From the NCBI RefSeq assembly GCF_026571515.1, contig NW_026857137.1, forward strand, positions 186,001-250,000: a DNA stretch of 64,000 nucleotides, given 5' to 3'. The DNA is from Ruditapes philippinarum (taxonomy: Eukaryota). Positions 13,660 to 46,855 of this stretch are shown one piece after another. The stretch's first letter is position 1, and every line of letters begins with the position of its first letter. A program made the translations under genes and the position numbers. The notes below the pieces were generated by a model. That model was not told where the DNA came from, ran no database searches, and worked only from the letters and a program-made list of their open reading frames with translations.

Positions 13660-13827
13660 ATTGAAAGAGACTGGAATTACGTTGCCATGGTTATGGATAG
13701 ACTGTTTCTGTTTATTTTTACAACGGCATGTATATGTGGTACAATCGGGATATTTCTGAATGCACCGTCAATACATGATCCCAGGATGCCGATGTCTAAA
13801 GATGACTTCAACTGTTCCAAGCGTTAA
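13660..13827 (+). CDS. Locus A exon 7 (M4 and C-terminus)
   Basis: [20 protein letters not shown]...FNCSKR-stop; exon lengths sum to 1545 nt = 514 aa + stop. Confidence 0.92.
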
Positions 13828-24954: not shown

Positions 24955-25191
24955 TAAGCCGTGTCACGACAAAACCAACATAGTGCGTTTGCGACCAGCA
25001 TGGATCCAGACCAGCCTGCGCATCCGCGCAGTCTGATCAGGATCCATGCTGTTCGCTATCAGTTTCTCTACTTGTCATATAGTTTTTAAGCGAACAGCAT
25101 GGATCCTGATCAGACTGCGCGGATGCGCAGGCTGGTCTGGGTCCATGCTGGTCGCAAACCCATTATGTTGGTTTTGTCGTGACACGGCTAA
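24955..25191. mobile_element. Fold-back MITE-like element, family 1, copy 2
   Basis: About 100-bp inverted arms around a short spacer, homologous to the copies at 8514 and 35428. Confidence 0.85.
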
Positions 25192-26197
25192 TATTATCAA
25201 GTATGCGAAAGATAATGGAAATATTTTAAACAGTAACTGTGTAACAAAATAATGAACTACATTTAATACATAGGAACTGCCCACACTAGACGGGAAGTAA
25301 TATTTATGTAAAATGATCCCACTATAAGGATGTAGCCGACCCATACAATCAGTTTGCAGACTGATAAATAAGAAACCGTTTATATACATGTGTCAGAAAA
25401 ATGACAGCAAGTTTATGATTAATAGTGATAGCGTGTCAATTGAATATAAGTAAAAGCTTTCCTTTATAAATTACAGATACATTTAAGATGCGATTCTCTC
25501 ATATTTGTTTTCAACAAAAATCTAAGAATTTTATTTCATCAGCTAAATTTCTGCATCCAAAAAAAGCAAATATTAAATGAAGATAAAAATCATTCTATAC
25601 TGTGCTATAAAAACAAATTACAATTATTATGATCCGCTTTATGTCTGAGGCAATTACTCTTATTTCAAATGAAATCGACAAAAATCGAATTTTGTAAGTA
25701 TTACTTAAATGTCAAATCATTTTAGATAAGATACTTTAAATGTCAATTTACATGATAATGAAATTTAAAGCGTAAAAGTTGCTATGATTTAAGGCTCAAT
25801 TTGTCCATGGAAATAAACAAGTTAAAGGAACGAACTCAAAGGTTATCTTACTTATTCGTCTGAAATTTACTAAAGTAAGTTTTTATGAAATGGCTAGGCA
25901 TACATAAAGCCATTTCAAAATCCGTTGATTAATGCTAAGGTAATACTAATTTGATAGAAAATATCAATAAGAAAATCAATATAAACTACTCATTATTGTT
26001 AACATTATATGATCATAAAGATAAGTTTCTTGGAGATTTCTATCAGTATCTATTTGTCATAGTGTATTTATATATTTATCTGTATAAACTTTACGGGATT
26101 AAATATCTATTTTCACATTGACTGCACATATAAAACATGAACTGTATATGAGCGCCCTTTAACTAACTCATGAAAAATCTTTTATTTCGTTTCTTTT

Positions 26198-26365
26198 CTA
26201 GCACAGGCCACCTTTTGCATTTTCGGCTGATAATGCCTCTCTATCGTCATAGATCGTAGGCGCTTGTAACAAAATTCCAAACGTCCCGATGAGCGATGCG
26301 GTGGTGAATACCCAGAAGAACATTCTATCCAGAACCATTGCAGCAAACTTCCAGTCTTCAATAAC
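26198..26365 (-). CDS. Locus B terminal exon 5b (M4 and C-terminus)
   Basis: ttttag|[55 protein letters not shown]-stop; not in the ORF track. Confidence 0.9.
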
Positions 26366-28238
26366 CTAAAATACGTTATGATAAACTGTAATGTTCATAT
26401 ATTTCCAGTGAAACAGAAATGTTTTGTAATATTATCTTCAACTGATAGTCCATATCAATTGATTGTGCTTTTAATGAACATACCTTATTTAACCTTTATT
26501 AAAAATGTTTAGAAAAAGAACTTAACTGTGTAAGACATATACAGGAGTTTCATAGATTACGCAATGATTTAATAAGTTAACGATATAACCTATTTTAGTA
26601 TCCTTTATAACGTTATACCCTGAGAATTGTTTATGGTTAAGTCAGTTATTACAACTAAATATGAGTTATGTTAGCGCTGGAAGAATCGTTTTCAATGCTC
26701 CAAATTTTTAATTAAACCAATGCTTTTTGAGAAATATAAGTCCTGTATTCACGAATACCTAGGTTTGAATCCTCGACACAAACAAATATTAAGTATTTAA
26801 GCACTCTAACATCTAGGCTGGCAGGATTATTAATACACATTTGCTTATAAGTAATCATATGCAATACTCAAAGCCCGCAATTCAGATACAGAAAATGGTT
26901 CTGAATACTTATTTAAATGCCTCAGGTTAATATTGCCAGGCAGTTCACCAACATATTACATTATTTTACTATATTTATGGGACAGCAAAAACACTACTCA
27001 ATATTTCAACATATTTTTCCTGCGGATTCCCTTAGCGGTAAACTTTGAATTACGCTTCGCCTCCGAATTCTATTTAACATTAGCATGTAAGCACGCTTGA
27101 TTGTAAGCGTAAATATGAGTTTAAAGATAAATATTTTAGTAAGTTTTCTAATGTTTTGCACTAGAAACAGAAATAATAATATTATTTCTAGTTTAAGTAC
27201 AACCAAAATAATTTCCAGTGTCTAATCACTCTGATGGCTAAGCTGACCTACAAATAAATGCGTGAAATAATCTAATTTGTGTATCAACTCGGCGATAATT
27301 ATCTCCGTTTATTTATAATCCTCCGTATCGTAATTGGACTTAGCATAATTCTTAGTTTATAAACAACTTAATTCATCATGTTCTTAATATATCTTTGTTT
27401 ATATAACAAGTTTATTTTTACGTATCCAGTAAGTGTAGCCAAAACCTGATGTTACTATTGTTTCAGTACTATCGTGGAATCGACCTTGTTCCATTGAGGA
27501 AAGTGTTAGAATGTGTTACGAATATTTGACGAATCTGAATTTAGTAAGTGCCAAAAACAATATTTTATCATTTATGAAGCATCGTAATGATAAACAAAAT
27601 ACATTTGCTAATTGTTAACCAGCAACATAAATAGCTATTTTGGAATTCGAGAAAGTATTACTACATTATTAACATTAATTCCCCATTTTACCTTTCTTTT
27701 GATCAGACCATACTCTTTTAGAACAATACACTACTTCAATTGGCGCCTACAATCAATCAGATTTTTTTGCAAGTGTTTTATTTTTCTGACATTGATTCTT
27801 GATTATTCGAGACTCGGGCTATGGTAGGTGAAAAAATAGTACGAGGCAATATGTCATTTGGAATGTACGTCAAAAACACTCGCATATAACGAAAGACTGA
27901 TCATTAATGACACAGCACCATTTAAATTTGTCTGGCCTTAACTTTTTGTAGACATTACCTAAAAAAACTATTGATATTTAAGTATAAACAATAAAGATAG
28001 AGTGCAGTCTTTAGGAAAGACTGCCTCACGATATGCTGTATTTCTTCTACATGACACTTTTGAAATTTATGAGAACTGCACAATGCAAGAAAGCAAACTC
28101 TTAAACGAGGAGATATATTTATGTTTTAAAATACACAACACATTAAACATATAAATATGGAAACAATTATATCAAGAAAATTTTAAATGTTGAAACACAA
28201 ATGTTTTCTGAAGTAAATATGTTTAGATAATTATATAC

Positions 28239-29217
28239 CGAAGAATAGTCATCTTCTTCTTTCAGATGATCGGAAATAAACTTAACATCTGATAGGACAT
28301 GTTCTATTGATTGAGGAAGTATGCTGTCACGCCGACCAGTCCCTGGTTCTTCATCGGAGCTTTGTGAAGCACGTTCGTATATGTGATTCTCGCCAGTTCG
28401 CACAAAGCTGACACCACTTCTTCTTATTGGGGAAATTTTAGAACTCACGCCATTACACTTGGACCGTTTGTGCTTTTTCATAATTGGTCGACGCATAAAT
28501 AATATTTTTGGTAGTATACGTAACAACGCAGTGCGAGTCCAGTTTGACATTTTATGCGTTGCAGGTGACCGGAAATGTATAGTAAGGATTAAAACTGTCA
28601 CAATAATAGATAATGTTACAAGAATCATAGTAAACAATAAGTATTTTCCTATCAACGGAATGACAATGGACGTTGGCGGAATGATTTCTGTCAGTAATAA
28701 GAAAAACACTGTTAAAGAAAGTAGTACGGATATACACAGTGTTATTTTCTCTTCACTATCTGACGGTAAATAAAACACAAGAACCGTCAGAAATGAAATT
28801 ACTGCGCATGGAAGGATGAGGTTCACTGTATGAAACAATGTCTTCCGTCTCATTGTGATGAAGAAAGTTAAATCAGGATACGGTTCAATACAGCATATGT
28901 ATATTTTGATACTTTTCTTTGCTGTCCCAGATAAAATATCCCATTCTACATTTTGATAAAATTCACTGAAGTCCATTCCATTTTCTATTACTTCAGTTGA
29001 ATCTTGGTCCTTAGCGCATACATGTACTAAATCAACTTCAAAACCATCGTATGTCCATGAACCAAATTTTAGTCCACATTTTTGAACATCAAAAGGGAAG
29101 AACTCTACGTTCATTATACAAGCGCTTTTGTAGACAGCAGGAGGTTCCCAAACTATTAAACCAGTATAAAATAAAGTTGCTTTTGTAAATAGTTGAACTT
29201 CGAAATGTCCGTCAGCA
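28239..29217 (-). CDS. Locus B exon 4b: alpha-type module
   Basis: ttttag|[14 protein letters not shown]...[15 protein letters not shown]...SWTYDG...[12 protein letters not shown]; M1-M3; TCG|GTATAT donor; 979 nt, phase 2 to 0. Confidence 0.93.
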
Positions 29218-31805
29218 CTAAAATAACAAAAATAAATTAACTTTTTAAAATAGTACTAACAAAAGTGCTTAAAAGTATCAATAATCTTCAAAAAAATATC
29301 ATGTTAGATATTTTCACTAACTTTACGATTACGCTAAATTAAATTCAATTCACTGCACAAAAAAGAGCAAGTATGTATAAATCTGAAACGCGCTAACAAT
29401 ATACAAACATATAATCTATATAACATATAACTGAAATCTTTAATTCAAATCAATTAAAGTAATTTAGTAAACTGTATTATTGACAGAATTGCATGCAGAC
29501 AACAGATCTAAGATATCTATCTATCTGGAATAGAAAGCACATATTAAGACAACATTCAAGCATGACTAAAGTAGTTGCTTTCAATAAGAAGTGCTTGTCT
29601 GAAGCGGATCATCCAATAACACTAAACATGAATAATTCACTCATAGGTCAATTTATTTGATTAAACTTTTCGTTAATATAGCATTCTCTGATTCAATGCA
29701 AAAATTAGTTTACTAAGCTATTTTTGCTGATCGTAAATATATATAAAACATTTCTTCTTCTGAAAAAAAAATCAAAGACATATAAAGAAAGTAAAAGAAA
29801 AGCTTCTTATTAAATAATGAGCTTGTTATGTCCAAACTTGCCACAGCTGTCAGTTTTATAGAATAAGAAGAAAAATCAACCGATAATTTCAGAGACTAAA
29901 TCTAATGTACGTAATAACTGTGATTATGGGCTACATTCTACTTCAATAGACAAGCAATATTTATAGTAAAGTATGATATTCTCTGAGGAGAACCTGTATA
30001 TATCTGTAAGTAAGTTATATATAATAAAACATTTCAAGCATAAAACGTCTATTCTATACCACAGTTCCATGAACGTTTAGAAATGTTACGATTTCGTAAG
30101 AAATGATATATTTAAGTCAAGATAGTTAATGGGTGCGTATACAAAATATGATCAAATTAAACAAGCAGCATGATCGGCTTTAGACTCAGGCACCATTACT
30201 TGTGCAAATGTTGACTTAAAGTCTTCACTTAAAATCACGTTGCATTTTAGATATAAGTGGCATTTATTGTCATAGTGCATTTAGTTTATCACATCTGATG
30301 TGAACAAGTAAACTGAAAAGAGCGGTATGCAATAAATGTAGCTGAAATGTAAAAATAGTTTAAATGCAACAATGTTTTAATTACAATATAAATTATGTTA
30401 TCAGCAGATGAAATATATCTGACATGGAACTATTCAGATGTAATATGTTGATTCTATTAGAAAATGCATTCCTTTATTTGTTCAGCAATTTTAGACCTAT
30501 ATAGACTGATCAATAATACTTAAACAGTGTATGGGCTTTGGTCTTCACATTAAATGAGTTCGTGCCGAAATAAAAATTGCTAATCATGGGAAATCCTCAT
30601 GATTATTTTGTTTGAATTGAATACGGCATTTTGTTGACACAGGTTTCAGGCATCAATTTATTTTCGATGTCGAATGAAAACCAGGAATGTCACAAATCTA
30701 TTGCATTTGACCATAGTATGCTGAAACAATCAAATATAATGTAGATTTTTTTTTCAGTTTTGTCAAACAACCTACATTAGGGTTCGAATTCTTAGACGAA
30801 AAAAACATACATTTTATTTCAACGGTCACTATAATATGTCCTAACAATTTTATGTCCTTACAACAAAAAGTGAAAGGAAACTTCGGAAATGCAGGTCTCT
30901 CTAGACCAAACACAAATTTCATACAAACATAATGGTGTTTTCGCGTTAGACAGTTCAGTAAAACTTAAGTAGAAAAGTATGTTGTATAAAGCATGTAATT
31001 TATCTTCGGAGTGCAAAGAGAAAACAAACAGTAAATAAAGTAGACGAAAACATCGTAGAAACGTTAATATCATTTGCAAAAGTAATGAATTGCTAATGTC
31101 AGAAACCAAATTTGTTTAATCAAAATGTCAATGCCAATCTTTCCTGTAAATCCAAGCATAAATTTCGTAAAGTCAATACTTTCTATTAAATTGTTACACT
31201 TTCTCTATAAAACCTGAAGGAAAGAAATCAGATTATATTTTTGTTCCTTTGACTTAAAATCTTAAATTTACAATTTGATTCAAACAAAAATATTTCTCAA
31301 ATTAGTGAAATAAAATACTTTAATATCATATATCCTGGAACAAAAGTCTAAAATAACCGAATCTCCCTTCAGCACGAGTTTCGGGATAATAGCAAGTGGC
31401 ATTTTATGACCCTGTATTTCTGTAGATAATTGTCAATCAAAAGGATATGACATAGACAATTACATTAGCAGTCCGTAGAAATGTTTTCCAAGCGCTAATA
31501 AGATTCTTTTATTCGGACAAGGGGTGAATTTCTGTCCCTGATAAGATGTAATATGAATTGGACATTATCATTGTTCTATAGTTGGATTATTTTGTGATGG
31601 TTTATGAAAAGAAATCATTACAGAGATGTGTTGGTTTCAAAGAATATCTCATGTTGCCTGGTTTCATTCGGTGCCAATCATTCACATCGTCACGCTCTTA
31701 TTCAAGGGACATAGGTAATACGCTATTAAAACTATCTTCAAAACATTCAATTGAACGGAGTCTTTATTGTGTATATTCTGTTAAAGGAATACTTCATAGA
31801 ACTTT

Positions 31806-31816
31806 TATCATTATTA

Positions 31817-31855
<39 letters not shown>

Positions 31856-31860
31856 ATTAT
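31806..31860. repeat. (ATT)n microsatellite
   Basis: Direct reading. Confidence 0.9.
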
Positions 31861-32346
31861 TTTTACGTGGTTTTGTCTGTCTCCTTTTAAAAATTTTCGT
31901 AGTTAATTTACATTATTTATTTGCCGAAAAAATAGACAGAGATAATAAAATAACCTTGGCACACATATAAAATAGACTTATGGGAAATTAAAAATGTACA
32001 GAAAATAAATAATTTTTGAGGTTGATTCGATTATACTTGAAGCTAAGCAAGAATATTTTTTTTTACCTTTTTTGCTAGGTTAGATGCGGTATAAAAAAAC
32101 ATATATCAGATCCCTCTAACGGTGATAGTACATAATGTTAACATTTGTAAGCTAATTTCGACCTCGGTTCACGCCTCGGTTCAAATTTTCTTTCTCGGAT
32201 TAACAATTCTAGCACCCTCAGAGGGTCCGATACTTGTATGATAATCAAACATTGCATGATTGCGTTATTCTCTGGTAGATATAGAAGCTCTATCGGACTA
32301 AATTATTTCTAAAAATCATTTTAAAATTTCACTTTCTTCCGTTTTA

Positions 32347-32643
32347 CTAATATTTTAAACGAATGTTTGTATTGAAGGTACAACAGTCATTATTATGCGT
32401 GCAAAGAACGTGAAATGCAACAAGTTCAAGACAGCAAGGTATAGATAATATTAGTATAAAATACATAAATGTATCATCCTTATATACCGGGTAACTTGTC
32501 ACAGGGGTGATGACATTTCGATTGTCATATAGTGTGGGTGCTTGAAGTATAATACCAAAAGTTCCAACAACGCAAGCTACTGTAAATATCCACAGAAACA
32601 GTCGATCTAACACCATAGCTACATACTTCCAATCTTCACTTAT
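32347..32643 (-). CDS. Locus B terminal exon 5a (M4 and long C-tail)
   Basis: ttacag|[20 protein letters not shown]...QAPTLYD...stop 32347; the 3' end is less certain than the 5' end. Confidence 0.85.
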
Positions 32644-33006
32644 CTGTAACATATCATTTCTTTATACATGGACATATATGGAAATAATTTTGATATATAA
32701 ATATTTCTATAAATATAAATAAATTTGTGTAGATATTTACTTATCTCTTGAGATAACTTCGTTAATGGTCAAACTATAAAGAAATATAATACGATTTATT
32801 TGTGACATGCAAGAAAGGTTCATCTTAAGATAACATTTCTTGCCTATAAATGATAGCAGAACATCCGTAAATTTTAAAACATAAATTTAATCTCTCCATT
32901 CGGAATGCAGCTTTTAAGATATTATCACAATTTCGATTCACATAAATAATACATACTGCGGTACTTATAAGGAGAATTCATACATACACGCAATAATACA
33001 ACATAC

Positions 33007-33961
33007 CGATGCTGAATAATCACCCTTCTTTAGATGTTCTGCGATGAATACTATACTGTCTATTGCCTCTTGTACATCTGGTGGAAGTTGCTGTTCTACT
33101 GTAGTACCATCCTCAGCTGGTCCCTGCCTAAGTCGTCTGCTTGTGTCGAACTCTAAATCATGTCTATTCACATACTGGTCTCTCATTTCTATACCATTAC
33201 ATGTCCTTACAATTGTTCTCGCAATTTTCTCGTGCTCAAGATTCGGTCTCCTCATCAAGAGCATTTTAGGCAAAATGTTTAAAAACACCCGCCGTACCCA
33301 TGGTGCCATAGTATGCGTTGATGGAGACCGGAAGTGCACATTTAATGTTATAACCGTCACTATGATTGACAAGGTAATCAGTATCATAGTAAAGAGCAGG
33401 TACTTGCCAATTAGCGGGACAACTATAGACGTGGGTGGAATTATCTCGGCGAGGAGCAGAAAAAAGAAGTTAAGTGAGAGCAGAATAGAGATACACAAGG
33501 TAATCTTCTCACAGCTGTCAGAGGGGAGATAAAATACCAGGATTGTCAAGCAAGAAATTGCAACAGAAGGAATAATTAAATTTACGGTATGAAATAATGT
33601 CTTTCGCCGAATTGTTACGTTGAATGTTATGTCAGGGGCATCTGTGTAGTTCAAGCTCTTTTCCGCAGTTACTTCTAGAACGTCCCATTCCCCGGATTCG
33701 TAGAAGCCCCGCAAATCGATGCCATTTTGAATAACTTCCTTCTTGTGTTTGTGTTTAGAACACTCATGTATAAGGTCCACCTGCGTGCCATCATATGTCC
33801 AAGAAGCAAATTTCATCGAGCAAAGCTGAATATCAAACGGGAAAAATTCGACTTCAATCGTGCATGAACTTTTGTAGATTGCGGGGGGCTCCCACACAAC
33901 ACCACCGCTATAGTTTAATGTTGCTTTTGTCATCAAAGTAACTTCGTACTGACCATCGGCA
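33007..33961 (-). CDS. Locus B exon 4a: non-alpha-type module (Cys-loop to cytoplasmic loop)
   Basis: tttcag|[14 protein letters not shown]...[15 protein letters not shown]...SWTYDG; loop [13 protein letters not shown] lacks CC; M1-M3 intact; TCG|GTATGT donor; 955 nt, phase 2 to 0. Confidence 0.93.
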
Positions 33962-34723
33962 CTGAAAGAGATCTTTCTATTTACTATAACCTGTATACAT
34001 ACTGAACCACAACCGAAAGAAATGAAAATAAAAAGAGCAACACCATGCGTGATTGGTATAAAACAGTTTATCCACAAATGTTGTCTATCTTCATTTGTAA
34101 TACTCCATTCTTTAAGTTGAGGTTTTTGTACAATTCAAACAAATAAATTACAGAAACAAAATATAAAAGCATTTCTTAATCACACCAAAATGCATTAAAG
34201 GGGTAAATGTGAAGCTGTTGTGACTGCAGTGTGTTCTCTACAATTGCTCTCACCCTATCCCAATACACGAGGAGTCACGTGACCCGTGATCCTAAGGGAT
34301 AGTAACCACCCGGTGTTGCCGGGGGCTTGTGATGATTATTGAAAATTGAAAGATACAAATAGCATTGTGTAGAATAACCTAGTAAATACAATACTGAAAA
34401 AGAGTAAAATTGCTACCTGAAAGAATACAAAGACATGTTGCAATTTATTACAATTTTGCAAGTTTTTACTCGTGAAAAGAAAATGATATGTTCTTAAATA
34501 TGTTTGTTTTGTTTAATGATAAATAAATTATTTGTTGAAGCCGTTAATTAAAGCTAAATTTGACTTCATGTGTAAATGTCTGTAAAATTATAACATAATG
34601 TGGTTATAAAATCAGCTTAGCTTTACAAAAAACAGTTTTTCTCAATATAATGATATTACTTTGTGAAAATGGCATTGTTGATAAAATGGTCATGGTAAAA
34701 GAACAAAATAAAAGTAAACTTAC

Positions 34724-34833
34724 TTATTGAACAGCACGATGTCTGGCAACCATATATTTTCTGATGGTAGCTCAAGTGTTTTGATACCTCCATATTCTTT
34801 CGGATCCCATCTTAAACTCACGTCAATCCATTC
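34724..34833 (-). CDS. Locus B alternative exon 3b (110 nt, loop A with Phe)
   Basis: [36 protein letters not shown]; cag acceptor, AA|GTAAGT donor; not in the ORF track. Confidence 0.9.
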
Positions 34834-35277
34834 CTGGTAGATACAAACAGTTCTTCTATAATACCAAGCTGCCTACTGCGTTTAGAAAAAAAACCTACGC
34901 GGAGCATGCCACAAGGAGCAAGAATGTCTCATCTACATTATGTATAGATAAAACAGTTTCATGCATTTGATTTGCGGTACATTTACTTAATATATTTAAC
35001 ATCCATGCTCACATTGACCACAATTACAACAAATTGCCACATTCTTATAACAATAATTTAAGACTTATTACGTCATAGAGGTGAACAAAAACACATGCTA
35101 GCACTAGAAAATACATCAATTTTCTAAGTATTTGTCGACTACATCAAATACTGCACCAATACGAATGATGAATAAAAAAAGGAAACGTGATCCAGACCAT
35201 CGAAAAATGCACATAGGCTTTTGCAACACACTTTACTACAGCAGCACGTTCATGCCTTTGCTAGATAAACAACATAC

Positions 35278-35387
35278 TTATTGTACAAAACAATATCGGG
35301 CAACCAAATCAGTTTGGAAGGAATATACAGCCTGTCCACACCGCCATATTTATGAGGGTCCCATCTTAAGTTATAGTCGTACCATTC
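35278..35387 (-). CDS. Locus B alternative exon 3a (110 nt, loop A with Tyr)
   Basis: [36 protein letters not shown]; poly-pyrimidine/aag acceptor, AA|GTATGT donor. Confidence 0.9.
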
Positions 35388-35427
35388 CTTCGTAAGCAAG
35401 AAAAAAACAAAACGATCAGCAAACGAC

Positions 35428-35669
35428 ATATGAGCCGCGTCATGACAAAACCAACGAAATGCGTTTGCGACCAGCATGGATCCAGACCAGCCTGCGCGTC
35501 CGCAAAGTCTGATCAGGATCAAGCTGTTAGCTATCAGTTTCTCTACTTGTAATAGAGTTTGTAAGCGAACAGCATGGATCCTGATCAGACTGCGCGAACG
35601 CGCAGGCTGGTCTGGATCCATGCTGGTCGCAAACCCATTATGTTGGTTTTGTCATGACACGGCTCATAT
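35428..35669. mobile_element. Fold-back MITE-like element, family 1, copy 3
   Basis: ATATGAGCCGCGTCATGAC...GTCATGACACGGCTCATAT. Confidence 0.85.
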
Positions 35670-38600
35670 TATATTTAATACAGGGCATTGGATATAGTTA
35701 CACAAGCATAACACGAAATTGTTGACCTTCAAAGTTTTATATATGCCACCATTTAAACAATATAAAAATAGACTGTCTTAGGACTTTGTCAATGGATTTT
35801 TTAGTTAGCACAACATCTGAATGTACTTCGATTACATGATATAAATGTTTTAAACTAAAATATACATATCGTCAGCTAGTGAACCTTAAGTTAGCCAGAG
35901 CATTATTCAGTACTGTTTCAACTTAACGACGGAAATGCGGTCAAAACACCCTTTATTATTGAATGGTGACTCATCTTTGTCTAAAGTTATTTCGGTTTTA
36001 ATTTTTTATTTAGTTTTTTTTTCTCTTTTTATATGGTTTTATTGCAAAAGTATTATTTTGGTAATAAGTATTCGTTAGATGAAGTAGCATCAAATCATAG
36101 ATGTTTTAAGTCAATTAGACAAAAATGGTAAGTTACATATCATGTCTAAAGGTTAGTAGAAGCCAAATCAACAAACATTTTATAACATATCAATCATATT
36201 TCACGTGGCATTGACCACATATCAATCATATTTATAAATACATTTGCTCTAGTTGATATCGGCTTGTTTTCTGAAACAGCCCAGAAGGCAATGGCAAAGA
36301 TTTGTGTTGCATATCGTAAGAGATAATATACTTTACTTTTGTTTACACTACATCAGAATTAAGATCAACATTGTGTAATTAACCATTTCTCCGCTGACGT
36401 TTTGTGTAATCGACTGTTTTGAACAATTTGGACAGATATACCAAACAAAATACAAAATAAACCCAGTGCTTTTTTTTGCTAAAATTTAAGGGACATTTTT
36501 GTTTGCATATAATCTAATCAAGTATCCTTACCGCTGTGCGACAGGTGCGATAAAGCAGGAAACATTTCAATAGTTTCTTTTTCCAATTGCCGCCTGCTAG
36601 TCATAATCAGAATTGATTGTTAAGCAGTATCATGTAGATGTTTCATATAAAAAACTTAAAACGAACTTGTAATTTAATTGCAATTGCAACCATTGCATTT
36701 TTTTCCGCAAATGTGGAATCGCATCGTTTATTCAAAAAATTAAACGGTGAAAATTCGTATGGAAAATGGAAATGTTACTAGAAAACCCAGACTCAGTTCT
36801 CGTAAGTTTTCCCAAAATTACAAAGTATCAACGTAATTTGCATTTAGGAAATCGAAAAGCACGGAAATAAATTGATGTTTATACAGTGTATCATTGAATC
36901 AGATCAGTCATTTGATAGAGACATCAAACTTCAATTACTTCTTTCTGGTATGCATTGCATACATAAAAGGAACAAGAAATTGTTTTATTTGATATATGAC
37001 TTATCTATTTGAGAATACACGGTCATGACTTAATTTTTTTTCACCATGAAAATACAAGCTGGGACATAGTTTGCCCTTTACATATGTTTACGGTTCTCTC
37101 CTTTTTTCAAGTTTTTACCTTACTATGATTGTACATAATTAATATTTATTTACCGGTTATCAATATTTTTGTATTTCAGCGAAGAAGAAACATGCAATAT
37201 TACTAATACTTTCGATGATATTGGTGTCATACGGGGTCATGACGCTTGCTAGAACGCCAGGCATGAGTAAACACTGTCCGTCCATCAAGTATCAGTCATT
37301 TCATCCTTTCAAACAATCATCAATCAAAATGACTCTATCTTGTTTGCAAAACATCAGCATCAACATTCATTGTGGATAAAATGTCTTGAATTGAACAAGT
37401 ACAGATGGGCTTGTATTTATCTATATAGCTCCTGTTTGGTATATCTTCTCCTCAGTTTATCAGTACTTTTAAAATTGACCAATCATTTTATTTATAAGAT
37501 GGTCATCGTAAATGAAATGAATTAAGCTTAAACACGTTCATTTGATTCTTAAAAAATTTGCAAAGAAAATTAACAGGCGCTAGATACACATGTACATTAC
37601 TTTCTTTAAACTTGTTATTAATTTTAATTTCAATTATTGATAAATAATCTTAATGCGTTTTTCAAAATTAAATAGGTTTTATCTTTTCTTATTAGAATAA
37701 TGTTTCAAGAATAAGATTGTCTTAAAAGTATATGGATTTAATTTATTTTTAGTGAATACTGTAATATGCATGACACACATATTAAATATTTGAAATAAGA
37801 TAATATGACAGGCAAAGGTTTAGTTTATGAGAACAAGCACTGACGAATTTAAAAAAAATGTTTCGTTTTAAACCCAATTAAAAATGAAGACTAGAAGCTA
37901 AATCCAAGCAAGCCCGTATTTTCATACAAACTTCCGATATTGATATACGATATAAATCGTGTATTTAGAAAAGGTAAGTTATTATTTTAATACATTTATG
38001 CAAAAGCTGTTAACGTGCATACCCTTCCAAATGAAGGCAGACAGAAGATGAAAAATAAGCATTTACTTCAAAGGCAAGCATCATAGATTGTGGTATATAG
38101 AAGATTAATTTTTACGCGTCTGTATTTTGATCATAAACAAATTAATTTGCCAGTTTGATATATACAATGATAACTTGCAGAATCATTGAGCATAAATATT
38201 CATATGAGCAGACAGGAAACAAAAATGGAAAATAGTCTGGTAAATCTGTTATAAATAACACATTATATTGTTAAAATAACTGGCCCTTAAACTGTTTATA
38301 ACATACCAAATGTATAAATCATACAGTTATGTAAGAAGCAAATACGTTAAAAGATAACTACATAAAATATCTAATGATAAAGTGAACGATTCACAAGCTT
38401 TTTAGCCCTTAAGTTACATTTTCCAGATTAACATAGCACATGGAGGTACCAACCAAGCCTGTTTGCATTTGGCCGACTGGTATCGTCGGGATGTTGCCGT
38501 CGGTTGGTTCTATGAACGTGCTGATAGAAGTAGTCAATGTTTAAATATTACAAATCTTGATTAAAACGATGACTTCATGCAAGAAACTGATATTAATCAG

Positions 38601-40533
38601 AATAATCTGTCGTCATAGTTTGCTCCCAAACCGAATAGAAATCTTAAAATTTCTAGCCTGGTAAAGTAGTTGAAATGTGAAAGTTTTTATTGTATTTATG
38701 CGCCGTCAATGATACAATAATAAAACCAGATATTACATTATATACAGTCATCATAGGAAGCTATAGACCGTATGCTTGATTGGTTAACGCAATTATTTTA
38801 TATCAAAGAAAATTTGCATTGCTCGGAAATCAAACTCACGCAAGCGAACTATTTTATATGCATAACGCATTCTGATTACAATCCATCTTTTCGATCATAG
38901 CCGGGAATAACAACTACTTAATCATAAATAGGATTTGTTTGATTCATTGTCTGCCATATTCCATGTAGTTTATTATACCGATAAAAAGGACGAACTATCA
39001 TGTGCTATTTCACTAAATTTAATAGTCTGTCTTTATAAGGTTTGTTTGGCATTCAAATTTTGATCAATATTTTCAATAAATCACACGATATCTGTGACAT
39101 AACATGTCACATTTCATATTTCAATTATGTGAATGTCGTTTAAATTAAAGAAAACCAAAACAAGACAAATAAAAGGAACGGAAATTTTACAAAAAGTAAA
39201 TGCCATCTTTTTTTAGCCCGGTAATTTATTTATAAACAGTTCAATGCTAATTAGGTTTATGATATTTTTTTGTAGCTACTGCATTGACTTTGAAGAGGCG
39301 CTGAATCTATTATTAAAACATTTTTATATAAAAGAAATTATACTGTTAGGAAATGAATTAAAACTGAATTGATTTAAAATCAATATTTGTAATATGAAAC
39401 CATATGAAACCAACAATTAAAATTCAGTTTTTTTTTTAAATTAATGTACCATTGAAAACGGAACATTTGCATGTTAATGTATCTATAATCATATTTTCAG
39501 TTAATTAAAATTTTCATCTATCAATACATTTTTACGGAAATTTGAAAGTCTAAACAACATTTCGGTTTTGTTAATTAAGAAAATTATTCATCAACTTAAA
39601 AGAATCTTTTTAGATTAAATAAAAATATCTGTTTTTATTCGACTGCACAAAAACAGCAAAACATGCAAATATTATCTAATAGAACTTCAATTAAAATCGT
39701 CATTCTTCGCAACATCAATAAATAAGATAAAATGACTTCTTTTATTCCCAGAAATTTAAAGTTTGAATTTAATGTGCTGTTAGTGCACAAAGCCCCAACG
39801 AATTACACCAATGTCTTTTTGCCTCTTACATCCGTAGCAAGCAATAAAGACTTTTACATTGGCAATATGTCCTCTGATAACACTGACTGGGTTTATTTAA
39901 AGACACTTGACTTTTATTGCAATATTCGGAATGAGTTTCAGGAAATAACGGTGTCTCTATATATCTCGTGTGCATATAATGGTATAAAACTATATAAAAC
40001 GTTTAAACTAATGATACGTAATGATATTTAATGATAATTGTTCTTCCTATCTTATTTTGAAATTAATTTTTGGCCGATCAGAAAACAAGTTATTTCAATT
40101 CAAAACATGTAATTTAAAACATTTCTTCTAAATTATAGATCAATTATATATATCTTGGTCTGCTTAAATCCTAACAGAAATTCACAAATTTTGGTAAAAT
40201 ATATATATATAAAAACAATCACATATTTTAATATAAAAGGTTGGTCAAGGTCACATTTGCAAGCATTCATGTCGTTGCGAAACTCGCAAACTTAGTCAGT
40301 TGCTTTATCGTTAAAGTGAATTTAATACTTTGGATATTTTCAATCGTCTCCAATACTTACTTCTCAGAAATGTTTAAAAAGAGGAAACCTCTTTTTAAAA
40401 CATCTCTGAGAAGTAAGTATTGGTTTCACATTTAAAGATAGGTTTAACTTTAAAATACAATAAAATTAAAAGATAATCAAAATGTTTTATTAAATCAATG
40501 AATCAAAGTTTTCATAGGGAAATAGGTAATTAC

Positions 40534-40578
40534 CTGTCTAATCCATACATTTGTCGTCATTACTTGATTTAACTCATC
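40534..40578 (-). CDS. Locus B shared exon 2 (45-nt loop D exon)
   Basis: ttttcag|DELNQVMTTNVWIRQ|GTAATT; not in the ORF track. Confidence 0.9.
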
Positions 40579-41407
40579 CTGAAAATAAATCGAAATAAAA
40601 AAATAATTAAAATAACTTAAATAGATATATCAATCTTATTTTGTACATAAAGGATTATGGCATGGTAAGTAACTATGCATATTCAATGTAGTTATATATG
40701 ACATTTTGTTATTTTCTAATACCTCTCGCCCTATATATATTCGTAACTCATAGTCTCACTATTGCTCGAATATTCTAGCTATAAGTGGGTAGAAATGTAA
40801 AAAGATAATGCTTAATTTTAAAATAAAAGGGAAGCGAATTTCAAACATATTCTTATGTTGACTCCGTTTTCCGTGTATGTTCATACTTTATCATCACGAT
40901 ATATCCACGGACGTTTATCATCTATTGAACTATAAAATTTGTTACAAGAAAATGAGCGATTAGGGGCAACAGTTTATTAACATGACGTCTTTTGGATAAG
41001 ACTGTAATTGAATATAAATGTCTAAAAAGTCATTTGTTACTCTCTTGTTATTTATGTTACATGCAATGTCTGACTGATAACTGTGATTTTATCGAAAGAT
41101 CATAATGACAAATGGAGGCCATATTGGTGGTCTCAGGGGCTTTAACTCTGGGTATGTATATTGGAACGTTATCGTTAAGCCATATAATATATAGAAAAAT
41201 ATATATAAAATACTTTCAATAGGGGTACAAGCCAGATTTACAAGGCAATTGAAATGTTGACATCTCAGTGTAACTTTTTTTTAAAGTTGAATATACATTG
41301 GTTGCACCATAGTCAACACGTATGATAAAACAACAACAAACAACAACATAAAACATAAAACGAAAAACACGAATGGTGTGCACCATATACACATCTGTCA
41401 GATTTTG

Positions 41408-41645
41408 TCGGTAGCTGAGTTGTTAGCGTCGTTGAATTCAAACCGCTAGTCCCTCATCACTGTGGGTCCAAATCCTGCCAGTTACTTATGATTCTTTCAG
41501 GTCAGGAAGCTATCAAGCTAGCTTACAGAATGTCATTAGCTCAATATGTGTCTGTAATAATGCCCTGAGAGGCACTTTAAGGTCTTCCTCCACCAGTTAA
41601 ACTAGAAAGTTGCTTAATTACCTTTACGTTGTTGGTGCGCCGTGA
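41408..41645 (+). mobile_element. Degenerate tRNA-derived SINE
   Basis: A-box-like TAGCTGAGTTG, B-box-like GGGTCCAAATCC, core GGAAGCTATC..GCTTAC...GGTCTTCCTCCACCA resembling bivalve SINE cores (from recall). Confidence 0.6.
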
Positions 41646-43120
41646 CGTTTCATTCTGTTTTTATTAGTGTAAAATACTACATTTACAATTTTGTTAGTTT
41701 TTGTATAAGTACTTTTAAAACTAGCGATAAATTTTCCCATTCAGCAATTCTAGCAAAGAAAGGTATTTCCGCGAGATCAAACACAAAAAAAGAAGCTAAA
41801 TTTACAAACTAGATTTTATCGAGTATGTTAGATATTCCTTATGTCATATCTGTTGGAAAATCATTAATGTACATAACAATTAATATACAATGGGTAAGAA
41901 CTTTGAATCAGTTATGAGATGTAAATGTCTTGTAAATTTTTGATTGATGTAAATATTATTAAAATGACCACAATAATAGAGACTAGAGAGTAAGTATGGA
42001 GAATAAGTATGCGTTATATGTCACTTTCTGTCAAAGTCTTGTGTTGTTTATTGAAGCGACCTGTCCGAATAATACTGTTATGAAAGATTCATCAATTCAT
42101 TATTGTGAATACTATTCATTCGGCACCGGAAGGAACACATTGATATACATAGGGAAATTATTTTCTGTAAGAGCAATGTAATTGCATTGTCATTGCATTT
42201 ATGCTCAACATTGCATTTTTGTTATTATTATTGCATTTGTTTGTCATTACCTAGGTATTGTATAATAACATAACAAAGATCAATTATAATGCGAAAAATG
42301 GAACCAGTTCCAGCGTAATTCACTTAAAGTATTCTAACTTGAACCACAATTGTAATATACGTTTAAACTATTTCATGTTTAGTTGTTAACGCCTTTGATA
42401 TCGGATGGTAATTCATATTCACCTTTTACTGGCCTTTTCCAAGTACCGTTTAGACAAAATTGTCTTTGTAGGAAGTGATAGTTACATTGATAGTGAATAT
42501 ATAGCATGTGGTAAAATAAAAAAATAGAACAGAAATTATAAGTAAGCAGTTTTGTCTGCAAAAAATAATGTATGTGGGTAATTACTCTATTCATTGTCTC
42601 TAAATTGATTCAATCACCTTAATCTGTGTTTTAATAACTCGTCGAAGTTGAAACGAAACATTTACTTGTCTTAATTCTATCTTATATTAAAAAGTAGAAT
42701 TTTAAATTCCGATACATCTGTAAAATCACGTTTCAATAATATCTTTAGCAAAAACCGTTCATATCTTAACAAAATATGAAAGAGGTTTAAAAAAAACCTT
42801 TTTAGCTTCCAACTCAATCCATGACTTTATAAAGGAGCAATTTTGACGGAACAATAACATAAGTAAAAGTCTATCATTAAATAAGAACTTGTACTAAACG
42901 TCATCTGTCGCTCTGTTATTATTCACGAAACATGCAATGCTGGTAATTACCGCCATTTTATTCCGATATTATTATGACAAATGGTAACTTTATGTCAGTC
43001 TGGACTCACTCCATCTTGATCTAGCGTAGGCAATCATTTTAGGTAAGTTTTACTCACGAACACCAATCAATGTCTCTGAAATGTGATTATAAGCAGAAAA
43101 TTGCGCATAATCTTACTTTA

Positions 43121-43642
43121 GAGTGCAACGTGACGGCTTTAGAAATTAACTACTGTCTAAATGTTAAATCGGGAAAACCTTATATAGATTTGGGTATACA
43201 TCTCCAAGTTTTGTTATGTCAAGCTGTTATTTTAATGACATAGTTCATCTAATGTTAGATGTTAACGTGTAACCTATAAAAATTGAAACAATAAACATTT
43301 AAGTGCAACGTGGCTGCTCTAAATATTGTGCCTGGGTGTTAACCCGGGAAACCTTTGTAAAGAATTTGGTATATTTCTCCAAGCCTTTGTATGTAAAGCC
43401 GATATTTTAATTACGTAGTTCATCTTTTGTTAGATGGTAACGTGTAATCTTTAAAAGAAATAAAACAGTAAAATAAATGTACACCATGACGGCTTTAAAT
43501 TTAACAAGTGTCTTAGTGTTAAAACGAGAAAACGTTTGTTGGAAATTGGTTATACATGTACTTCCAATTCTTTTTATGCAAAGCGATTACTTGAAATATA
43601 TAGTACATCTTTTGTTAGATGTTAACGTGTAACCTGTAAAAA
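43121..43642. repeat. Three diverged tandem copies of a ~180-bp unit
   Basis: Recurring TAGTTCATCT..TGTTAGATG.TAACGTGTAA at ~43241, 43416 and 43601. Confidence 0.8.
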
Positions 43643-45289
43643 ACAAAGAAGGCCAGACTCACAGACACGTGTGAATTATGATACTTCATATCATATACTT
43701 TTCCAGCCACTAGGAATGATGGGGATTTCCAAGTTTACGTGTGTTTGTCAGCATCTGCTATCAAGTACACATTTAAGATGTGTTTTGACAATACTTTCAA
43801 AAGGAAAATGTGCATGTAAGATGGCGAAGAACCCTATTAATTTCAAACATCACTAAGAACGTGTCTGTTGTTTTGCTAGACATCGTTAGAGAAAATTTGT
43901 ATTTATAAGTGACAGTGCTTGTTTGGACAAATTATCATTATTCCTTGATGTGATAATAAAAATGAAAGACAAGTATGTCCAATGATTCTGGTTTATTCTG
44001 AGAATGTTCACATTAAGAATCTCCCGTCTTAGGTTGTTATGTTAATTGCATCTCAGAATTTCATATCCCCATATGTTTAAAAGTACGTCTACACTGAGGG
44101 GTTCTTTGACATGTCAACACTGGAAAATGTTTTTTGAGAATTATACAAAAATTTATGAACTATTTTCGTGCAGGTCTGGACCAATAACTTGTGTGCAATT
44201 TTTTAGATCATTCGCTAAGTTTGAAAATTCAAATTTTTGTGTTCCTTGGCTTTTAGACCTCGGTTGTGTTTCCTTAAATTTGATACGGTATAATCGTTAT
44301 ATTAAGAAGTCCTGATGGTGTATGATACAACAAAGTGGTCAGTTCTTTAATGTCATAAATTCTCTTATATATAACTATTCGAATGATAATACAATATTTA
44401 GCTTGACACATTTCACAAAGTTCAATACATTTATGGATTCTATAATTGACTTTCCATCCATGCTAGTTGCTTTTTGACTGACATGGATATGTTCTATTTT
44501 AGCAAGTATCGAACATAAATGAGCCGCTGCAGTTATTAATGACTATTTATTTAAAAAATAAACTAGTCTGTTTGGACTATAGAACTGACTATTTGTTTTT
44601 AACAGTGATGTCATTGTTAGTAGTACGTTACAACAAAAACGCTGTTACAGAACAGAACATCTTTATTTATTTGCAAATACATGCATATATATTCATGCCC
44701 TTCACAAATAGATGAAATCGTATCGGAAAATATTATTAAATTATAATTGATTAATTAAACTTCAAGCTATCAGCAATTATCAAATATTAATTATAAAATC
44801 AAGAGTATTCATTGAAAGTTATAGCATAATACTTTTTATTCAAAATCAAAATATCTTCATAAATATAGTTTTTTTTAATATCTGTGCCATTATAGAAATG
44901 GTTATATTTTGTTATTATTAAAATAATTATGCAAATATGTTAACCGATATGTCATGTATAAAAAATGTCTTAATAAATGTCCAGATACAAAACAATATAA
45001 GTGGTATAAAATAATTTTACCTTAATGCAGCATGCCTTTGGATTCCTGCTCATTTTCACAAAAAAATAAAATTGTATCTAAAAGTAAATATTGTGAAGTG
45101 AACAAAAATTAATTAAAATCAATTAAACATCCTGAAAATGTTACTAAATGATATACTTGTACATAGGTAGATATTAAATTGTTAAATTGTAGCTTATATT
45201 AATAATTCAGAACATTGAAGTTAAGCAATGCTTTTGGGATAGTCAATGGGGAATCTTCAGAATGCTTGTTAACTTATCATCAGTGGTGA

Positions 45290-45570
45290 TTTTTGTAGTT
45301 TACCATCTGGATCACGGCAGTTAGCCACTTTGAATACAATACACCGTCAACGAATCGTTTTTTGACAGGCTGTTAAACGGTTTACCAGTACTAAATGCCT
45401 TCACTTTCCATGAAGTTCTTTACATGCCAGGACAGGGATGCAGACGAGTGCGTACGGCCGTAGAAAGGATTTCATGATCAGTCCCAAGGAAAATAGCCTG
45501 CATTGTCCGGAAATCGAACCCGGTCGCCTGATTCACAGTCCAACGCTTGACCAGTTGAACTAACTGTGCA
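45290..45570 (-). mobile_element. tRNA-derived SINE with a tRNA-like head (GTG loop)
   Basis: Minus strand TAGTTCAACTGG (A box)...CTGTGAA...GGGTTCGATTTCC (B box), followed by a non-tRNA body. Confidence 0.6.
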
Positions 45571-46648
45571 ATATCATTACCGTTTTTTGTTTTCAATTTT
45601 TGTATTCGGATTTGAAGCACTATCAATTTAATATAAATCCACTACATAACTCAGACAACCAATAATCTCAACGATAAATTGCCACCGATTTATTCGATTT
45701 TCAAGTGAAAACATAAAGGTATTGATAAAGAAATGTATAAGGGGGTTCCGTTCTTATTATTCTAATTATTCAGTAAGAAACACTTTAATTGGTTTATTAT
45801 TTACATTGTTAAGGCAATTTTAAAGACCAAATAAAATCGATTTAACATGACTATACGCTATATTCGTTAAATACTTGGTTCAGATGGGTATTGCTCTAAA
45901 TATACTTTGCTTAAATTTGACAATATTGATAATTGATATACAGTCTCTTTGTAGATATTATAAACCATGTTTTGACTTCACACAAAGTTGATAATTATGC
46001 TATCACACTTAAAGCGGACACAATATTAATATGACGTGTTAATATTTAACCAAATGTACTTGACCAGTAATAGGGAATGCAGCTTCGCAAAGTTTGTACA
46101 TTCTTTCCTTTAAATTAGACATATTCGGTGAGAATTGCATATTTTTCAATAAATTTCTGCGATAAAATTTTTTACTCAAAGATGTGCATAGTATATCTTT
46201 AACACATTTAAAGGGAACGACCTACAATTTCCTTAATAAAAAAGGTTACGCTTTTATTAGTCTGTTCCAAAGTGTTTTTATAACAAACGAACCTTAAAAC
46301 TTATTAACTCAACATATGTTATTAAGTATAAAGATTGGAATGATATAGACAAATACTATGATTAATGTGAAGTCATGGAAAACCACGTATAATTGCCTGA
46401 TATGTAAACACCGGTAACATTATCTTCTGGTATTACTAGACCTATCCAATACAACATTGGTATAAATTACCTATCCAATATCATTGTATCAAAGAAATAT
46501 ATACCATCTGTCCACAATATACCGATCGAACATGTTCTGCTCGTGTTTATTAAATGCGGTAACAGCTTGAAGTCCTGTATATTGTTTTGTGTAAAATGAA
46601 TAAAATAAGAACAAATCAATGTCAATATGAAATATAAGATACACTTAC

Positions 46649-46855
46649 CACGTCAATTATCTGTGAAAGTCGGATTCCCATTTTCACAGTCAGTGGGCGG
46701 TCTGTGTTATTACCGACTGGTCGTATTAGTTTGTTGTATTTATTCTGAATTAAAAGATCATGATATAATCGTTTAGCATCGTCATTCGCATAACACTCCA
46801 TTGCCAGTAACACAGCGCCGAAAATACACAGGTGTGCTAATACCGTAAGCGCCAT
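46649..46855 (-). CDS. Locus B nAChR shared exon 1 (signal peptide to beta1 strand)
   Basis: [35 protein letters not shown]...[30 protein letters not shown]; GTAAGT donor, phase 0. Confidence 0.93.

What the first reader, a model, noticed from the sequence alone, without database searches (positions are those of the whole stretch)
26198..46855. One nAChR gene with shared 5' exons and alternative alpha versus non-alpha 3' halves
Seen: only one signal-peptide exon (46649-46855) and one loop-D exon (40534-40578) precede two 110-nt loop-A exons (3a, 3b) and two intact 3' modules (4a+5a, 4b+5b). I found no 5' nAChR exons in 29218-32346, so module 4b/5b has no front end of its own. Module 4b has the alpha signature YICCIEPY; module 4a lacks it. 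All sites are GT/AG with matching phases, giving 502 aa (1-2-3-4b-5b) or 537 aa (1-2-3-4a-5a); 4a-5b is also in frame, so up to 2x3=6 products. Known: alpha and non-alpha subunits are normally separate genes, and known insect nAChR splicing (alpha4, alpha6) swaps single exons. Inference: splicing or poly(A) choice here switches subunit class, Cys-loop, pore and cytoplasmic loop together, so one promoter could supply both faces of a binding site.
Basis: partly seen in the sequence, partly recalled or inferred. Interest (0 to 1): 0.92.

Follow-up and report, generated by a model that had tools for sequence, protein, structure and literature searches.

The report
One clam gene, alpha and non-alpha nAChR
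In the Manila clam a single nicotinic-receptor gene appears to make either an agonist-binding (alpha) or a non-alpha subunit by swapping a block of three exons after two shared first exons, an arrangement that databases model silently but that we found described in no paper.

Summary
On the minus strand there is one exon 1, one exon 2, two 110-nt exon-3 copies and two 3' modules, all with AG/GT sites. No other 5' nAChR exon lies in the locus.

The window is Ruditapes philippinarum. Its exons match two RefSeq isoforms of one gene exactly:
- X1 (502 aa) = 1-2-3a-4b-5b, the alpha form.
- X2 (492 aa) = 1-2-3b-4a-5a'-Cys, the non-alpha form.

- Exon 3 choice goes with the module: 3a (loop-A Tyr) with 4b/5b, and 3b (Phe) with 4a/5a.
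- The non-alpha product is 492 aa, not 537. An internal donor at 32488 joins the 4b acceptor, where TGC TGA gives Cys-stop. The alpha exons then serve as 3'UTR.
- The switch is by splicing, not by poly(A) choice.

Models or spliced contigs from Mercenaria, Mactra, Mya, Dreissena and an unnamed relative also join the non-alpha end to alpha exon 4. The alpha and non-alpha clades predate the Venerida-Myida split.

The 3a-to-4b junction therefore rests on Gnomon models and on conservation. I found no paper describing this. I rate it a new variant of nAChR alternative splicing, interest 0.68.

The parts
46649..46855 (-). Shared exon 1 (start codon, signal peptide, N-terminal helix; coding part only, 5'UTR not mapped)
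   Evidence: ATG, then 69 codons, then a GT donor. Identical to residues 1-69 of both RefSeq isoforms. The only close copy in the genome.
40534..40578 (-). Shared exon 2, 45 nt, loop D (DELNQVMTTNVWIRQ)
   Evidence: AG/GT sites, phase 0. Matches residues 70-84 of both isoforms. The only such exon in the locus by tblastn and HMM.
35278..35387 (-). Exon 3a, 110 nt, loop A with Tyr (WLPDIVLYN); alpha-type
   Evidence: Matches X1 residues 85-120 and is absent from X2. 28/36 identical to exon 3 of the Mya alpha model P0006, against 21-23/36 between the alpha and non-alpha exon-3 versions within Mya or within Ruditapes.
34724..34833 (-). Exon 3b, 110 nt, loop A with Phe (WLPDIVLFN); non-alpha-type
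   Evidence: Matches X2 residues 85-120. 83-88% identical in tblastn to the exon-3 region of P0121 and Mactra P0122; 29/36 to Mya P0129.
33007..33961 (-). Exon 4a: non-alpha module. Holds the rest of the ligand-binding domain (Cys-loop, loop B, no vicinal Cys), TM1-TM3 and the cytoplasmic loop.
   Evidence: 318 codons without a stop. Pfam LBD positions 93-216 plus the TM region. 97% identical to the Mercenaria protein. Matches X2 residues 122-439.
32488..32643 (-). Exon 5a' (short form): TM4 and tail of the non-alpha subunit, ending ...TSYP at donor CCG|GTATAT
   Evidence: Matches X2 residues 440-491. All tblastn alignments of relatives stop at 32488-32497.
32347..32487 (-). Not conserved, probably intron.
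   Evidence: No homologue continues past ...YP. tblastn finds no similarity here.
28239..29217 (-). Exon 4b: alpha module (Cys-loop, loop B, loop [11 protein letters not shown]1-TM3, cytoplasmic loop). Its first six bases, TGC TGA, are read in phase 0 as the last codon and stop of the non-alpha mRNA.
   Evidence: 326 codons without a stop. Matches X1 residues 122-447. The only AG|TG[CT]+stop site between 32487 and 15000. TM1-3 is 95-98% identical to the Mya, Dreissena and Mactra alpha modules.
26198..26365 (-). Exon 5b: TM4 and C-terminus of the alpha subunit, with stop. A candidate poly(A) hexamer lies at 26186.
   Evidence: Matches X1 residues 448-502. Hexamer scan.
34834..35277 (-). 444-nt intron between 3a and 3b, with five GCAUG motifs
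   Evidence: 5 in 444 nt against 0.92 per kb over the whole locus. Regulatory use is not tested.

Best explanation
This is one Ruditapes philippinarum nAChR gene, about 20.7 kb on the minus strand. It is transcribed from a single promoter upstream of exon 1.

After shared exons 1-2 (signal peptide, loop D) the pre-mRNA takes one of two routes.

**Route A, the alpha subunit.**
- Exon 3a joins exon 4b directly across a 6,060-nt intron that contains 3b, 4a and 5a. Exon 5b follows.
- The product is a 502-aa alpha subunit with loop-A Tyr and loop-C YxCC.

**Route B, the non-alpha subunit.**
- Exon 3a is skipped and 3b-4a-5a' are included.
- The internal donor of 5a' (32488) joins the same 4b acceptor in phase 0.
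- The invariant N-A-D codons (T GCT GAC) are then read as TGC TGA, that is Cys-stop.
- The product is a 492-aa non-alpha subunit, and its mRNA carries exons 4b and 5b as 3'UTR.

Because 3a and 3b are both 110 nt, taking both or neither shifts the frame.

**What is shown.**
- The exon anatomy, phases and uniqueness.
- Identity to the two RefSeq isoforms.
- Conservation of both modules as proteins.
- Spliced joins of the non-alpha end to alpha exon 4 in relatives.

**What is inferred.**
- That the 3a-to-4b junction is used in vivo.
- That exon 3 choice is strictly coupled to module choice.
- That the two products co-assemble.

The shared-5' layout is probably ancestral for Imparidentia. Mya appears to have duplicated exons 1-2 later.
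For: **Identity to RefSeq.**
- Every window exon matches XP_060594553.1 (X1, 502 aa = 1-2-3a-4b-5b) or XP_060594554.1 (X2, 492 aa = 1-2-3b-4a-5a'+C) exactly.
- Both are isoforms of one gene on one 417-kb contig.

**Only one set of 5' exons.**
- There is no second exon 1 or exon 2 in the locus or the genome.
- Each module alone starts at Pfam LBD position 93-94 of 216, so each needs exons 1-3. Both full isoforms cover LBD 2-216 and TM 1-232.

**The non-alpha stop.**
- X2's terminal Cys-stop can only come from the 4b acceptor.
- The same ...YPC end occurs in Mercenaria X1, in Mactra KAL4228144 and in the cDNA-like Logan ORF P0121.

**Joins of the non-alpha end to alpha exon 4 in relatives.**
- Logan ORFs P0002 and P0174 have 4b-5b spliced. 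They begin with a peptide that is the shifted-frame reading of the non-alpha tail (10-11 of 13 residues; 0 of 5000 random peptides reach this).
- The first 29 aa of Dreissena X2 are 28/28 codon-compatible with the last exon of Dreissena X1 (random maximum 13).
- Mya WAQ98350.1 strings a whole non-alpha protein onto alpha exons 4-5.

**The alpha module is translated.**
- TM1-3 is 95-98% identical across Ruditapes, Mya, Dreissena and Mactra. The ECD is 76-80% and the cytoplasmic loop 44-52%.
- It has no stops in more than 10 species.

**Pairing and age.**
- The alpha and non-alpha clades each have 100% support, and each holds venerid, Mactra, Mya and Dreissena sequences.
- In Mya, alpha against non-alpha is 43/45 in exon 1 and 15/15 in exon 2, but 21/36 in exon 3 and 214/366 in exons 4-5. 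The break falls at the same exon 2/3 boundary.
Against:
- The 3a-to-4b junction rests on two Gnomon models, Ruditapes X1 and Mya P0006. These may be driven by homology.
- Among 5.8 billion proteins, no transcript-derived ORF joins a 3a-type exon to an alpha-type exon 4.
- Every spliced piece of evidence that includes alpha exon 4 has it downstream of non-alpha exons.
- Mercenaria RefSeq lists no alpha isoform.
- Mya's alpha model has its own exon 1, though without a signal peptide.
- No RNA structure or other mechanism that would couple 3a to 4b was found.
Confidence: 0.66

Rival explanations
1. Only the non-alpha subunit is made. Exons 4b/5b are the remains of a former alpha gene, captured as the 3'UTR and stop codon of the non-alpha mRNA. 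Exon 3a is an unused or rarely used alternative.
For: - All transcript-like evidence places alpha exon 4 after non-alpha exons.
- No full-length alpha ORF of cDNA origin was found.
- The alpha clade has long branches.
- Dreissena X2 and P0002 encode N-terminally truncated ORFs.
Against: - An untranslated relic would not keep about 380 codons open in more than 10 species.
- It would not keep TM1-3 at 95-98% while the cytoplasmic loop falls to 44-52%.
- It would not keep the Cys-loop and YxCC.
- Exon 3a keeps its splice sites and is 28/36 identical to the Mya alpha exon 3.
Confidence: 0.14
2. Exon 3a/3b choice is independent of module choice, and the modules are selected by poly(A) or splice choice. 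This gives up to six proteins, including a 537-aa non-alpha form.
For: - All combinations are in frame.
- AATAAA/ATTAAA hexamers lie after the long 5a stop, the nearest at 31921.
- Nothing tested here excludes minor chimeric isoforms.
Against: - Homology pairs 3a with the alpha module and 3b with the non-alpha module in every full-length relative.
- The 45-codon 5a extension is not conserved.
- Relatives end at ...YPC.
- RefSeq lists two isoforms only.
Confidence: 0.12
3. These are two separate genes. The alpha module has its own promoter and 5' exons that were missed, or the layout is an assembly error.
For: - Mya has separate alpha and non-alpha models with different exon 1 sequences.
- The assembly is fragmented, with 15,874 contigs.
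Against: - The HMM and tblastn scans find no further N-terminal exon in 26-47 kb.
- Exon 1 has no close second copy in 1.41 Gb.
- Independent assemblies or annotations of Dreissena, Mactra and Mya also put the alpha module right after the non-alpha gene.
- The ...YPC ends require the alpha exon 4 acceptor downstream of 5a'.
Confidence: 0.05

Closest known systems
RefSeq models XP_060594553.1 / XP_060594554.1 (Ruditapes philippinarum 'acetylcholine receptor subunit alpha-like 1' isoforms X1/X2), and the Dreissena polymorpha pair XP_052277530.1 / XP_052277531.1
   Same: These are this very locus and its Dreissena counterpart. They are already modelled by Gnomon as one gene with an alpha-type and a non-alpha-type product.
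   Different: They are automatic predictions, both named 'alpha-like'. Nothing in the names returned for them says that the isoforms differ in subunit class or that one mRNA stops inside the other's coding exon. I found no paper that discusses them.
Insect nAChR alpha6 mutually exclusive exons 3a/3b and 8a/b/c (Jin et al. 2007, PMC1919356)
   Same: A tandem pair of homologous, equal-length exon-3 versions in the ligand-binding domain is used alternatively in a Cys-loop receptor gene.
   Different: In insects single exons are swapped and the subunit stays alpha. Here the exon-3 pair goes with a swap of the entire remaining two thirds of the protein (loops B and C, the pore, the cytoplasmic loop and TM4), and the vicinal Cys pair is gained or lost.
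Loci with shared 5' exons and alternative 3' exon sets, such as CALCA calcitonin/CGRP, Drosophila lola and mod(mdg4), and the cholinergic ChAT/VAChT locus (from memory, not tested here)
   Same: One promoter and common first exons serve different downstream coding blocks.
   Different: In those loci the alternatives mostly end at their own poly(A) sites or are trans-spliced. Here the proximal block is a cassette nested in an intron of the distal product. It splices back into the distal exons, which then act as 3'UTR after a frame-shifted stop.
Tandem nAChR gene arrays of bivalves (Jiao et al. 2019, PMC6896357)
   Same: The window lies in such an array. Two further complete nAChR genes flank the locus, and more than 150 exon-3-like hits exist in the genome.
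   Different: That paper describes whole-gene tandem duplicates and retrogenes. Its text has a single word beginning 'splic', and none beginning 'isoform', 'non-alpha' or 'vicinal'.

Membership tests
Pentameric ligand-gated ion channel / nAChR subunit (Pfam PF02931 + PF02932) | Complete ligand-binding domain followed by the four-helix transmembrane region | tested here: met
   X1 covers LBD 2-216/216 (1.5e-70) and TM 1-232/233. X2 covers LBD 2-216 (3.4e-71) and TM 1-232. Each 3' module alone starts at LBD position 93-94.
Pentameric ligand-gated ion channel / nAChR subunit (Pfam PF02931 + PF02932) | Cys-loop: two Cys separated by 13 residues | tested here: met
   4a has [15 protein letters not shown] and 4b has [15 protein letters not shown], read directly from the translations.
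Alpha-type nAChR subunit | Vicinal Cys pair in loop C (YxCC) | tested here: met
   Met for module 4b (YICCIEPY). Not met for module 4a or for any of the 10 members of its clade. Outgroup orthologues (Pecten, oysters, Potamilus, gastropods, Octopus) have YxCC, so its loss is the derived state.
Alpha-type nAChR subunit | Loop-A aromatic Tyr (Torpedo alpha1 Y93 equivalent, WxPDxxxYN) | tested here: met
   3a has WLPDIVLYN and 3b has WLPDIVLFN. Phe is present in all seven full-length non-alpha relatives, and Tyr in the Mya alpha model. The residue's role is taken from established nAChR knowledge.
Mutually exclusive exon pair | Adjacent, homologous exons of equal length and phase, whose joint inclusion or joint skipping shifts the frame | tested here: met
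   Both are 110 nt and lie 444 nt apart. They are 64% identical in protein, and 110 mod 3 = 2.
Mutually exclusive exon pair | Transcripts contain one or the other, never both | not testable with these tools
   Only the two RefSeq models show it.
Single gene with shared 5' exons | No separate first exons for either 3' module | tested here: met
   tblastn, HMM over six frames at maximum sensitivity and a whole-genome search. First exons without homology to nAChRs cannot be excluded.

The most novel reading that the evidence does not exclude
Since before the Venerida-Myida split, heterodont bivalves may have kept a single transcription unit that encodes both partners of a heteromeric nicotinic receptor. 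One partner is an alpha subunit that supplies the principal binding face. The other is a non-alpha subunit. Block-wise exon choice would set their ratio cell by cell. The non-alpha mRNA would carry the alpha coding exons as a regulatory 3'UTR, after a stop codon borrowed from the shifted NADG motif.
Probability: 0.4. Interest if true: 0.82.

Novelty: new variant of a known kind. Interest (0 to 1): 0.68.

Why it matters
In every textbook case, nAChR subunit class (alpha versus non-alpha) is fixed by which gene is expressed. Known splicing changes single exons within a class.

If this locus works as modelled, three things follow:
- One promoter yields both classes.
- Receptor stoichiometry could be set by splicing factors rather than by transcription. 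The GCAUG cluster between 3a and 3b is a candidate handle for such factors.
- Counts of nAChR 'genes' in bivalves understate the subunit repertoire.

The locus also shows a rare anatomy: a coding cassette nested in an intron of its paralogous module, which terminates by reading that module's first codons out of frame.

It is directly testable by junction counting and by oocyte co-expression of X1 and X2.

Tried and rejected
The Mya, Mercenaria, Dreissena and Logan contigs could not be fetched, so there is no cross-species DNA architecture and no dN/dS.
Even with runs, the 3a donor and the 4b acceptor are 6,061 nt apart and would not fit in one 6,000-letter call.

**Searches that found nothing useful.**
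- A third protein search, on residues 70-200 of X1, looked for transcript-derived ORFs joining a 3a-type exon to alpha exon 4. Only the Mya Gnomon model P0006 turned up.
- A search for long-range complementary RNA that could loop out the non-alpha cassette found only short AT-rich pairs and a MITE hairpin.
- A hidden exon 6 encoding Cys-stop between 5a and 4b is rejected, because the 4b acceptor is the only fitting site.
- Hidden 5' exons for the alpha module are rejected.
- A second alpha or exon-1 copy elsewhere in the genome is rejected.

- I built no joined exon model for any search. The joined products were compared only as the database proteins P0173 and P0166, and the window was matched to them exon by exon.
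Full report
**What is in the sequence**

- e1 46649-46855
- e2 40534-40578
- 3a 35278-35387 and 3b 34724-34833, each 110 nt
- 4a 33007-33961
- 5a 32347-32643
- 4b 28239-29217
- 5b 26198-26365

The arithmetic of 502 aa (1-2-3-4b-5b), 537 aa (1-2-3-4a-5a) and 494 aa (4a-5b) is correct.

Module 4b has YICCIEPY. Module 4a has lost that stretch of loop C.

Several searches agree that the locus has one set of 5' exons:
- tblastn with six full-length relatives finds one exon 1 and one exon 2 between 26 and 47 kb.
- A profile HMM of nAChR N-termini, run at full sensitivity over every six-frame fragment of the window, finds only e1, e2, 3a and 3b in the locus. It finds nothing on the minus strand in 29218-32487.
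- In the whole 1.41-Gb assembly (window = contig C5624:186001-250000), exon 1, exon 3a and module 4b are single-copy. The next best exon-1 hit is 68% identical over half its length.

The window also holds two other complete nAChR genes, on the minus strand at 58167-61994 and on the plus strand at 6656-13815.

**Identity of the locus**

Protein searches with 4b and 4a and a cluster look-up led to two RefSeq proteins of Ruditapes philippinarum on one 417-kb contig:
- XP_060594553.1, 'acetylcholine receptor subunit alpha-like 1 isoform X1', 502 aa
- XP_060594554.1, 'isoform X2', 492 aa

Matched exon by exon, the window translations are identical to them:
- X1 = e1-e2-3a-4b-5b
- X2 = e1-e2-3b-4a-5a' plus one Cys, where 5a' is 32488-32643 only

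I built no joined model of my own. The joined products were handled only as these database proteins.

NCBI's pipeline therefore already treats this as one gene with an alpha and a non-alpha product. Literature searches found no discussion of it. The main paper on lophotrochozoan nAChR expansion has a single word beginning 'splic' and none beginning 'isoform', 'non-alpha' or 'vicinal'.

**Correction 1: exon 3 choice goes with the module**

- 3a is closest to exon 3 of the Mya alpha model P0006, at 28/36 identical.
- 3b is closest to the non-alpha proteins, at 83-88% (P0121, Mactra P0122) and 29/36 (Mya P0129).
- Between the two types, identity is only 21-23/36.
- 3a carries the loop-A Tyr (WLPDIVLYN), which goes with a principal face. 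3b carries Phe, as do all seven full-length non-alpha relatives. The residue's role is established nAChR knowledge.

**Correction 2: the non-alpha product is 492 aa and ends inside the alpha module**

Relatives share nothing with the 45 codons after ...TSYP. Alignments stop at 32488, where there is a donor, CCG|GTATAT.

X2 then needs one Cys codon and a stop. Between 32487 and 15000, the only AG followed by TG[CT] and a stop codon is the 4b acceptor at 29217. There the bases T GCT GAC, which read N-A-D in the alpha frame, are read in phase 0 as TGC TGA.

The non-alpha mRNA therefore runs on through 4b, and presumably 5b, as 3'UTR. The switch is cassette inclusion, not poly(A) choice.

**Evidence from relatives that this join is real**

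- The same ...YPC end is found in Mercenaria X1, in Mactra KAL4228144 and in P0121. P0121 is a 490-aa uninterrupted ORF on a 2-kb Logan contig, so it is cDNA-like.
- Two Logan ORFs, P0002 and P0174, have alpha exons 4 and 5 spliced together. They start with MIIG(I/T)LLHPWNIIR. That peptide is codon-compatible, in the shifted frame, with 10-11 of the 13 residues of the non-alpha tail DNRN.ITPV.SYP. None of 5000 random peptides reached this against three of the four tails tested, and 1 of 5000 reached the 9 of 13 scored against the Mactra tail. These contigs therefore hold the joins 5a'-4b-5b without introns.
- In Dreissena, RefSeq X1 (non-alpha) and X2 (alpha module) have consecutive accessions. 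The first 29 residues of X2 are 28/28 codon-compatible with X1's last exon, CVPPVEN...PRQ-stop, in the +1 frame. The maximum from random peptides was 13.
- Mya WAQ98350.1 (892 aa) is a whole non-alpha protein followed by alpha exons 4-5.
- Mactra's two models have adjacent accessions.

Independent assemblies and pipelines thus put the alpha module directly downstream of the non-alpha exons and splice into its exon 4. This removes misassembly as an explanation.

**Is the alpha module only a UTR?**

The conservation pattern says it is not. Between Ruditapes and the Mya, Dreissena and Mactra alpha modules:

| Region | Identity |
|---|---|
| TM1-TM3 | 95-98% |
| Ectodomain part | 76-80% |
| TM4 | 75-83% |
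| Cytoplasmic loop | 44-52% |

The frame stays open in more than ten species, and the Cys-loop and YxCC are retained. That is the signature of a translated channel subunit.

The module alone begins at Pfam LBD position 94 of 216, so it needs a signal peptide and loops D and A. The only exons that can supply them are e1, e2 and 3a.

**Age and origin**

A maximum-likelihood tree gives an alpha clade and a non-alpha clade, each with 100% support and each containing venerid, Mactra, Mya and Dreissena sequences. Outgroup orthologues from scallop, oysters, Potamilus, gastropods and Octopus carry YxCC. The split therefore predates the Venerida-Myida divergence, and loss of the Cys pair is the derived state.

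In Mya the alpha model has its own exon 1. Even so, alpha against non-alpha compares as follows:

| Exon | Identity |
|---|---|
| Exon 1 | 43/45 |
| Exon 2 | 15/15 |
| Exon 3 | 21/36 |
| Exons 4-5 | 214/366 |

The two Mya exon 1 copies also share Mya-specific residues (RPIGNNTNK, against RPVGNNTDR in Ruditapes). The break falls exactly at the exon 2/3 boundary. This fits an ancestrally shared 5' part that was duplicated or homogenised later in Mya.

**What is missing**

- The 3a-to-4b junction rests on two Gnomon models plus the conservation argument.
- No transcript-derived ORF with that junction exists among the representatives searched.
- The strictness of the 3a/4b and 3b/4a coupling is open.
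- The fate of a non-alpha mRNA whose stop lies about 970 nt upstream of an exon junction is open.
- Co-assembly of the two products is open.
- No convincing long-range RNA pairing was found.

**Verdict**

It is already present as unannotated-in-words RefSeq isoforms but undescribed in the papers searched. I rate it a new variant of nAChR alternative splicing. Confidence in the two-route model is 0.66 and interest is 0.68.

Noticed in passing
window 35428-35669: A 242-bp foldback (MITE-like) element with 93-nt arms that are 92% complementary. It sits 41 nt upstream of the exon 3a acceptor. The family is young and abundant: copies are 93-95% identical, and there were more than 3,000 first-look candidates in the genome. 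Related copies lie at about 24884-25389. Whether the hairpin affects 3a use is unknown.
   Followed up: partly
window 34834-35277: Five GCAUG motifs lie in the 444-nt intron between 3a and 3b, against 0.92 per kb across the locus. This is about 12-fold above the locus average of 0.92 per kb (no statistical test was run), and it fits Rbfox-type control of the exon-3 switch. Not tested.
   Followed up: partly
window 58167-61994 (minus) and 6656-13815 (plus): Two further complete multi-exon nAChR genes flank the locus. More paralogues lie on the same contig (C5624 at about 106, 121-123, 181-184, 304-325 kb). The genome gives more than 150 exon-3-like hits.
   Followed up: partly
Mya arenaria proteins P0006, P0129, P0182, P0185: Mya has at least two alpha modules, two non-alpha genes and three different exon 1 sequences. 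The alpha model P0006 starts MCNLFGYSDG... with no signal peptide. One GenBank model fuses non-alpha and alpha parts in frame, giving 892 aa.
   Followed up: partly
one search hit list: Several insect and helminth nAChR models of 600-870 aa scored highest against the exon 2-4 region. The likely reason is that both alternative exons, or tandem genes, were merged into one model. This is a common annotation artefact.
   Followed up: no
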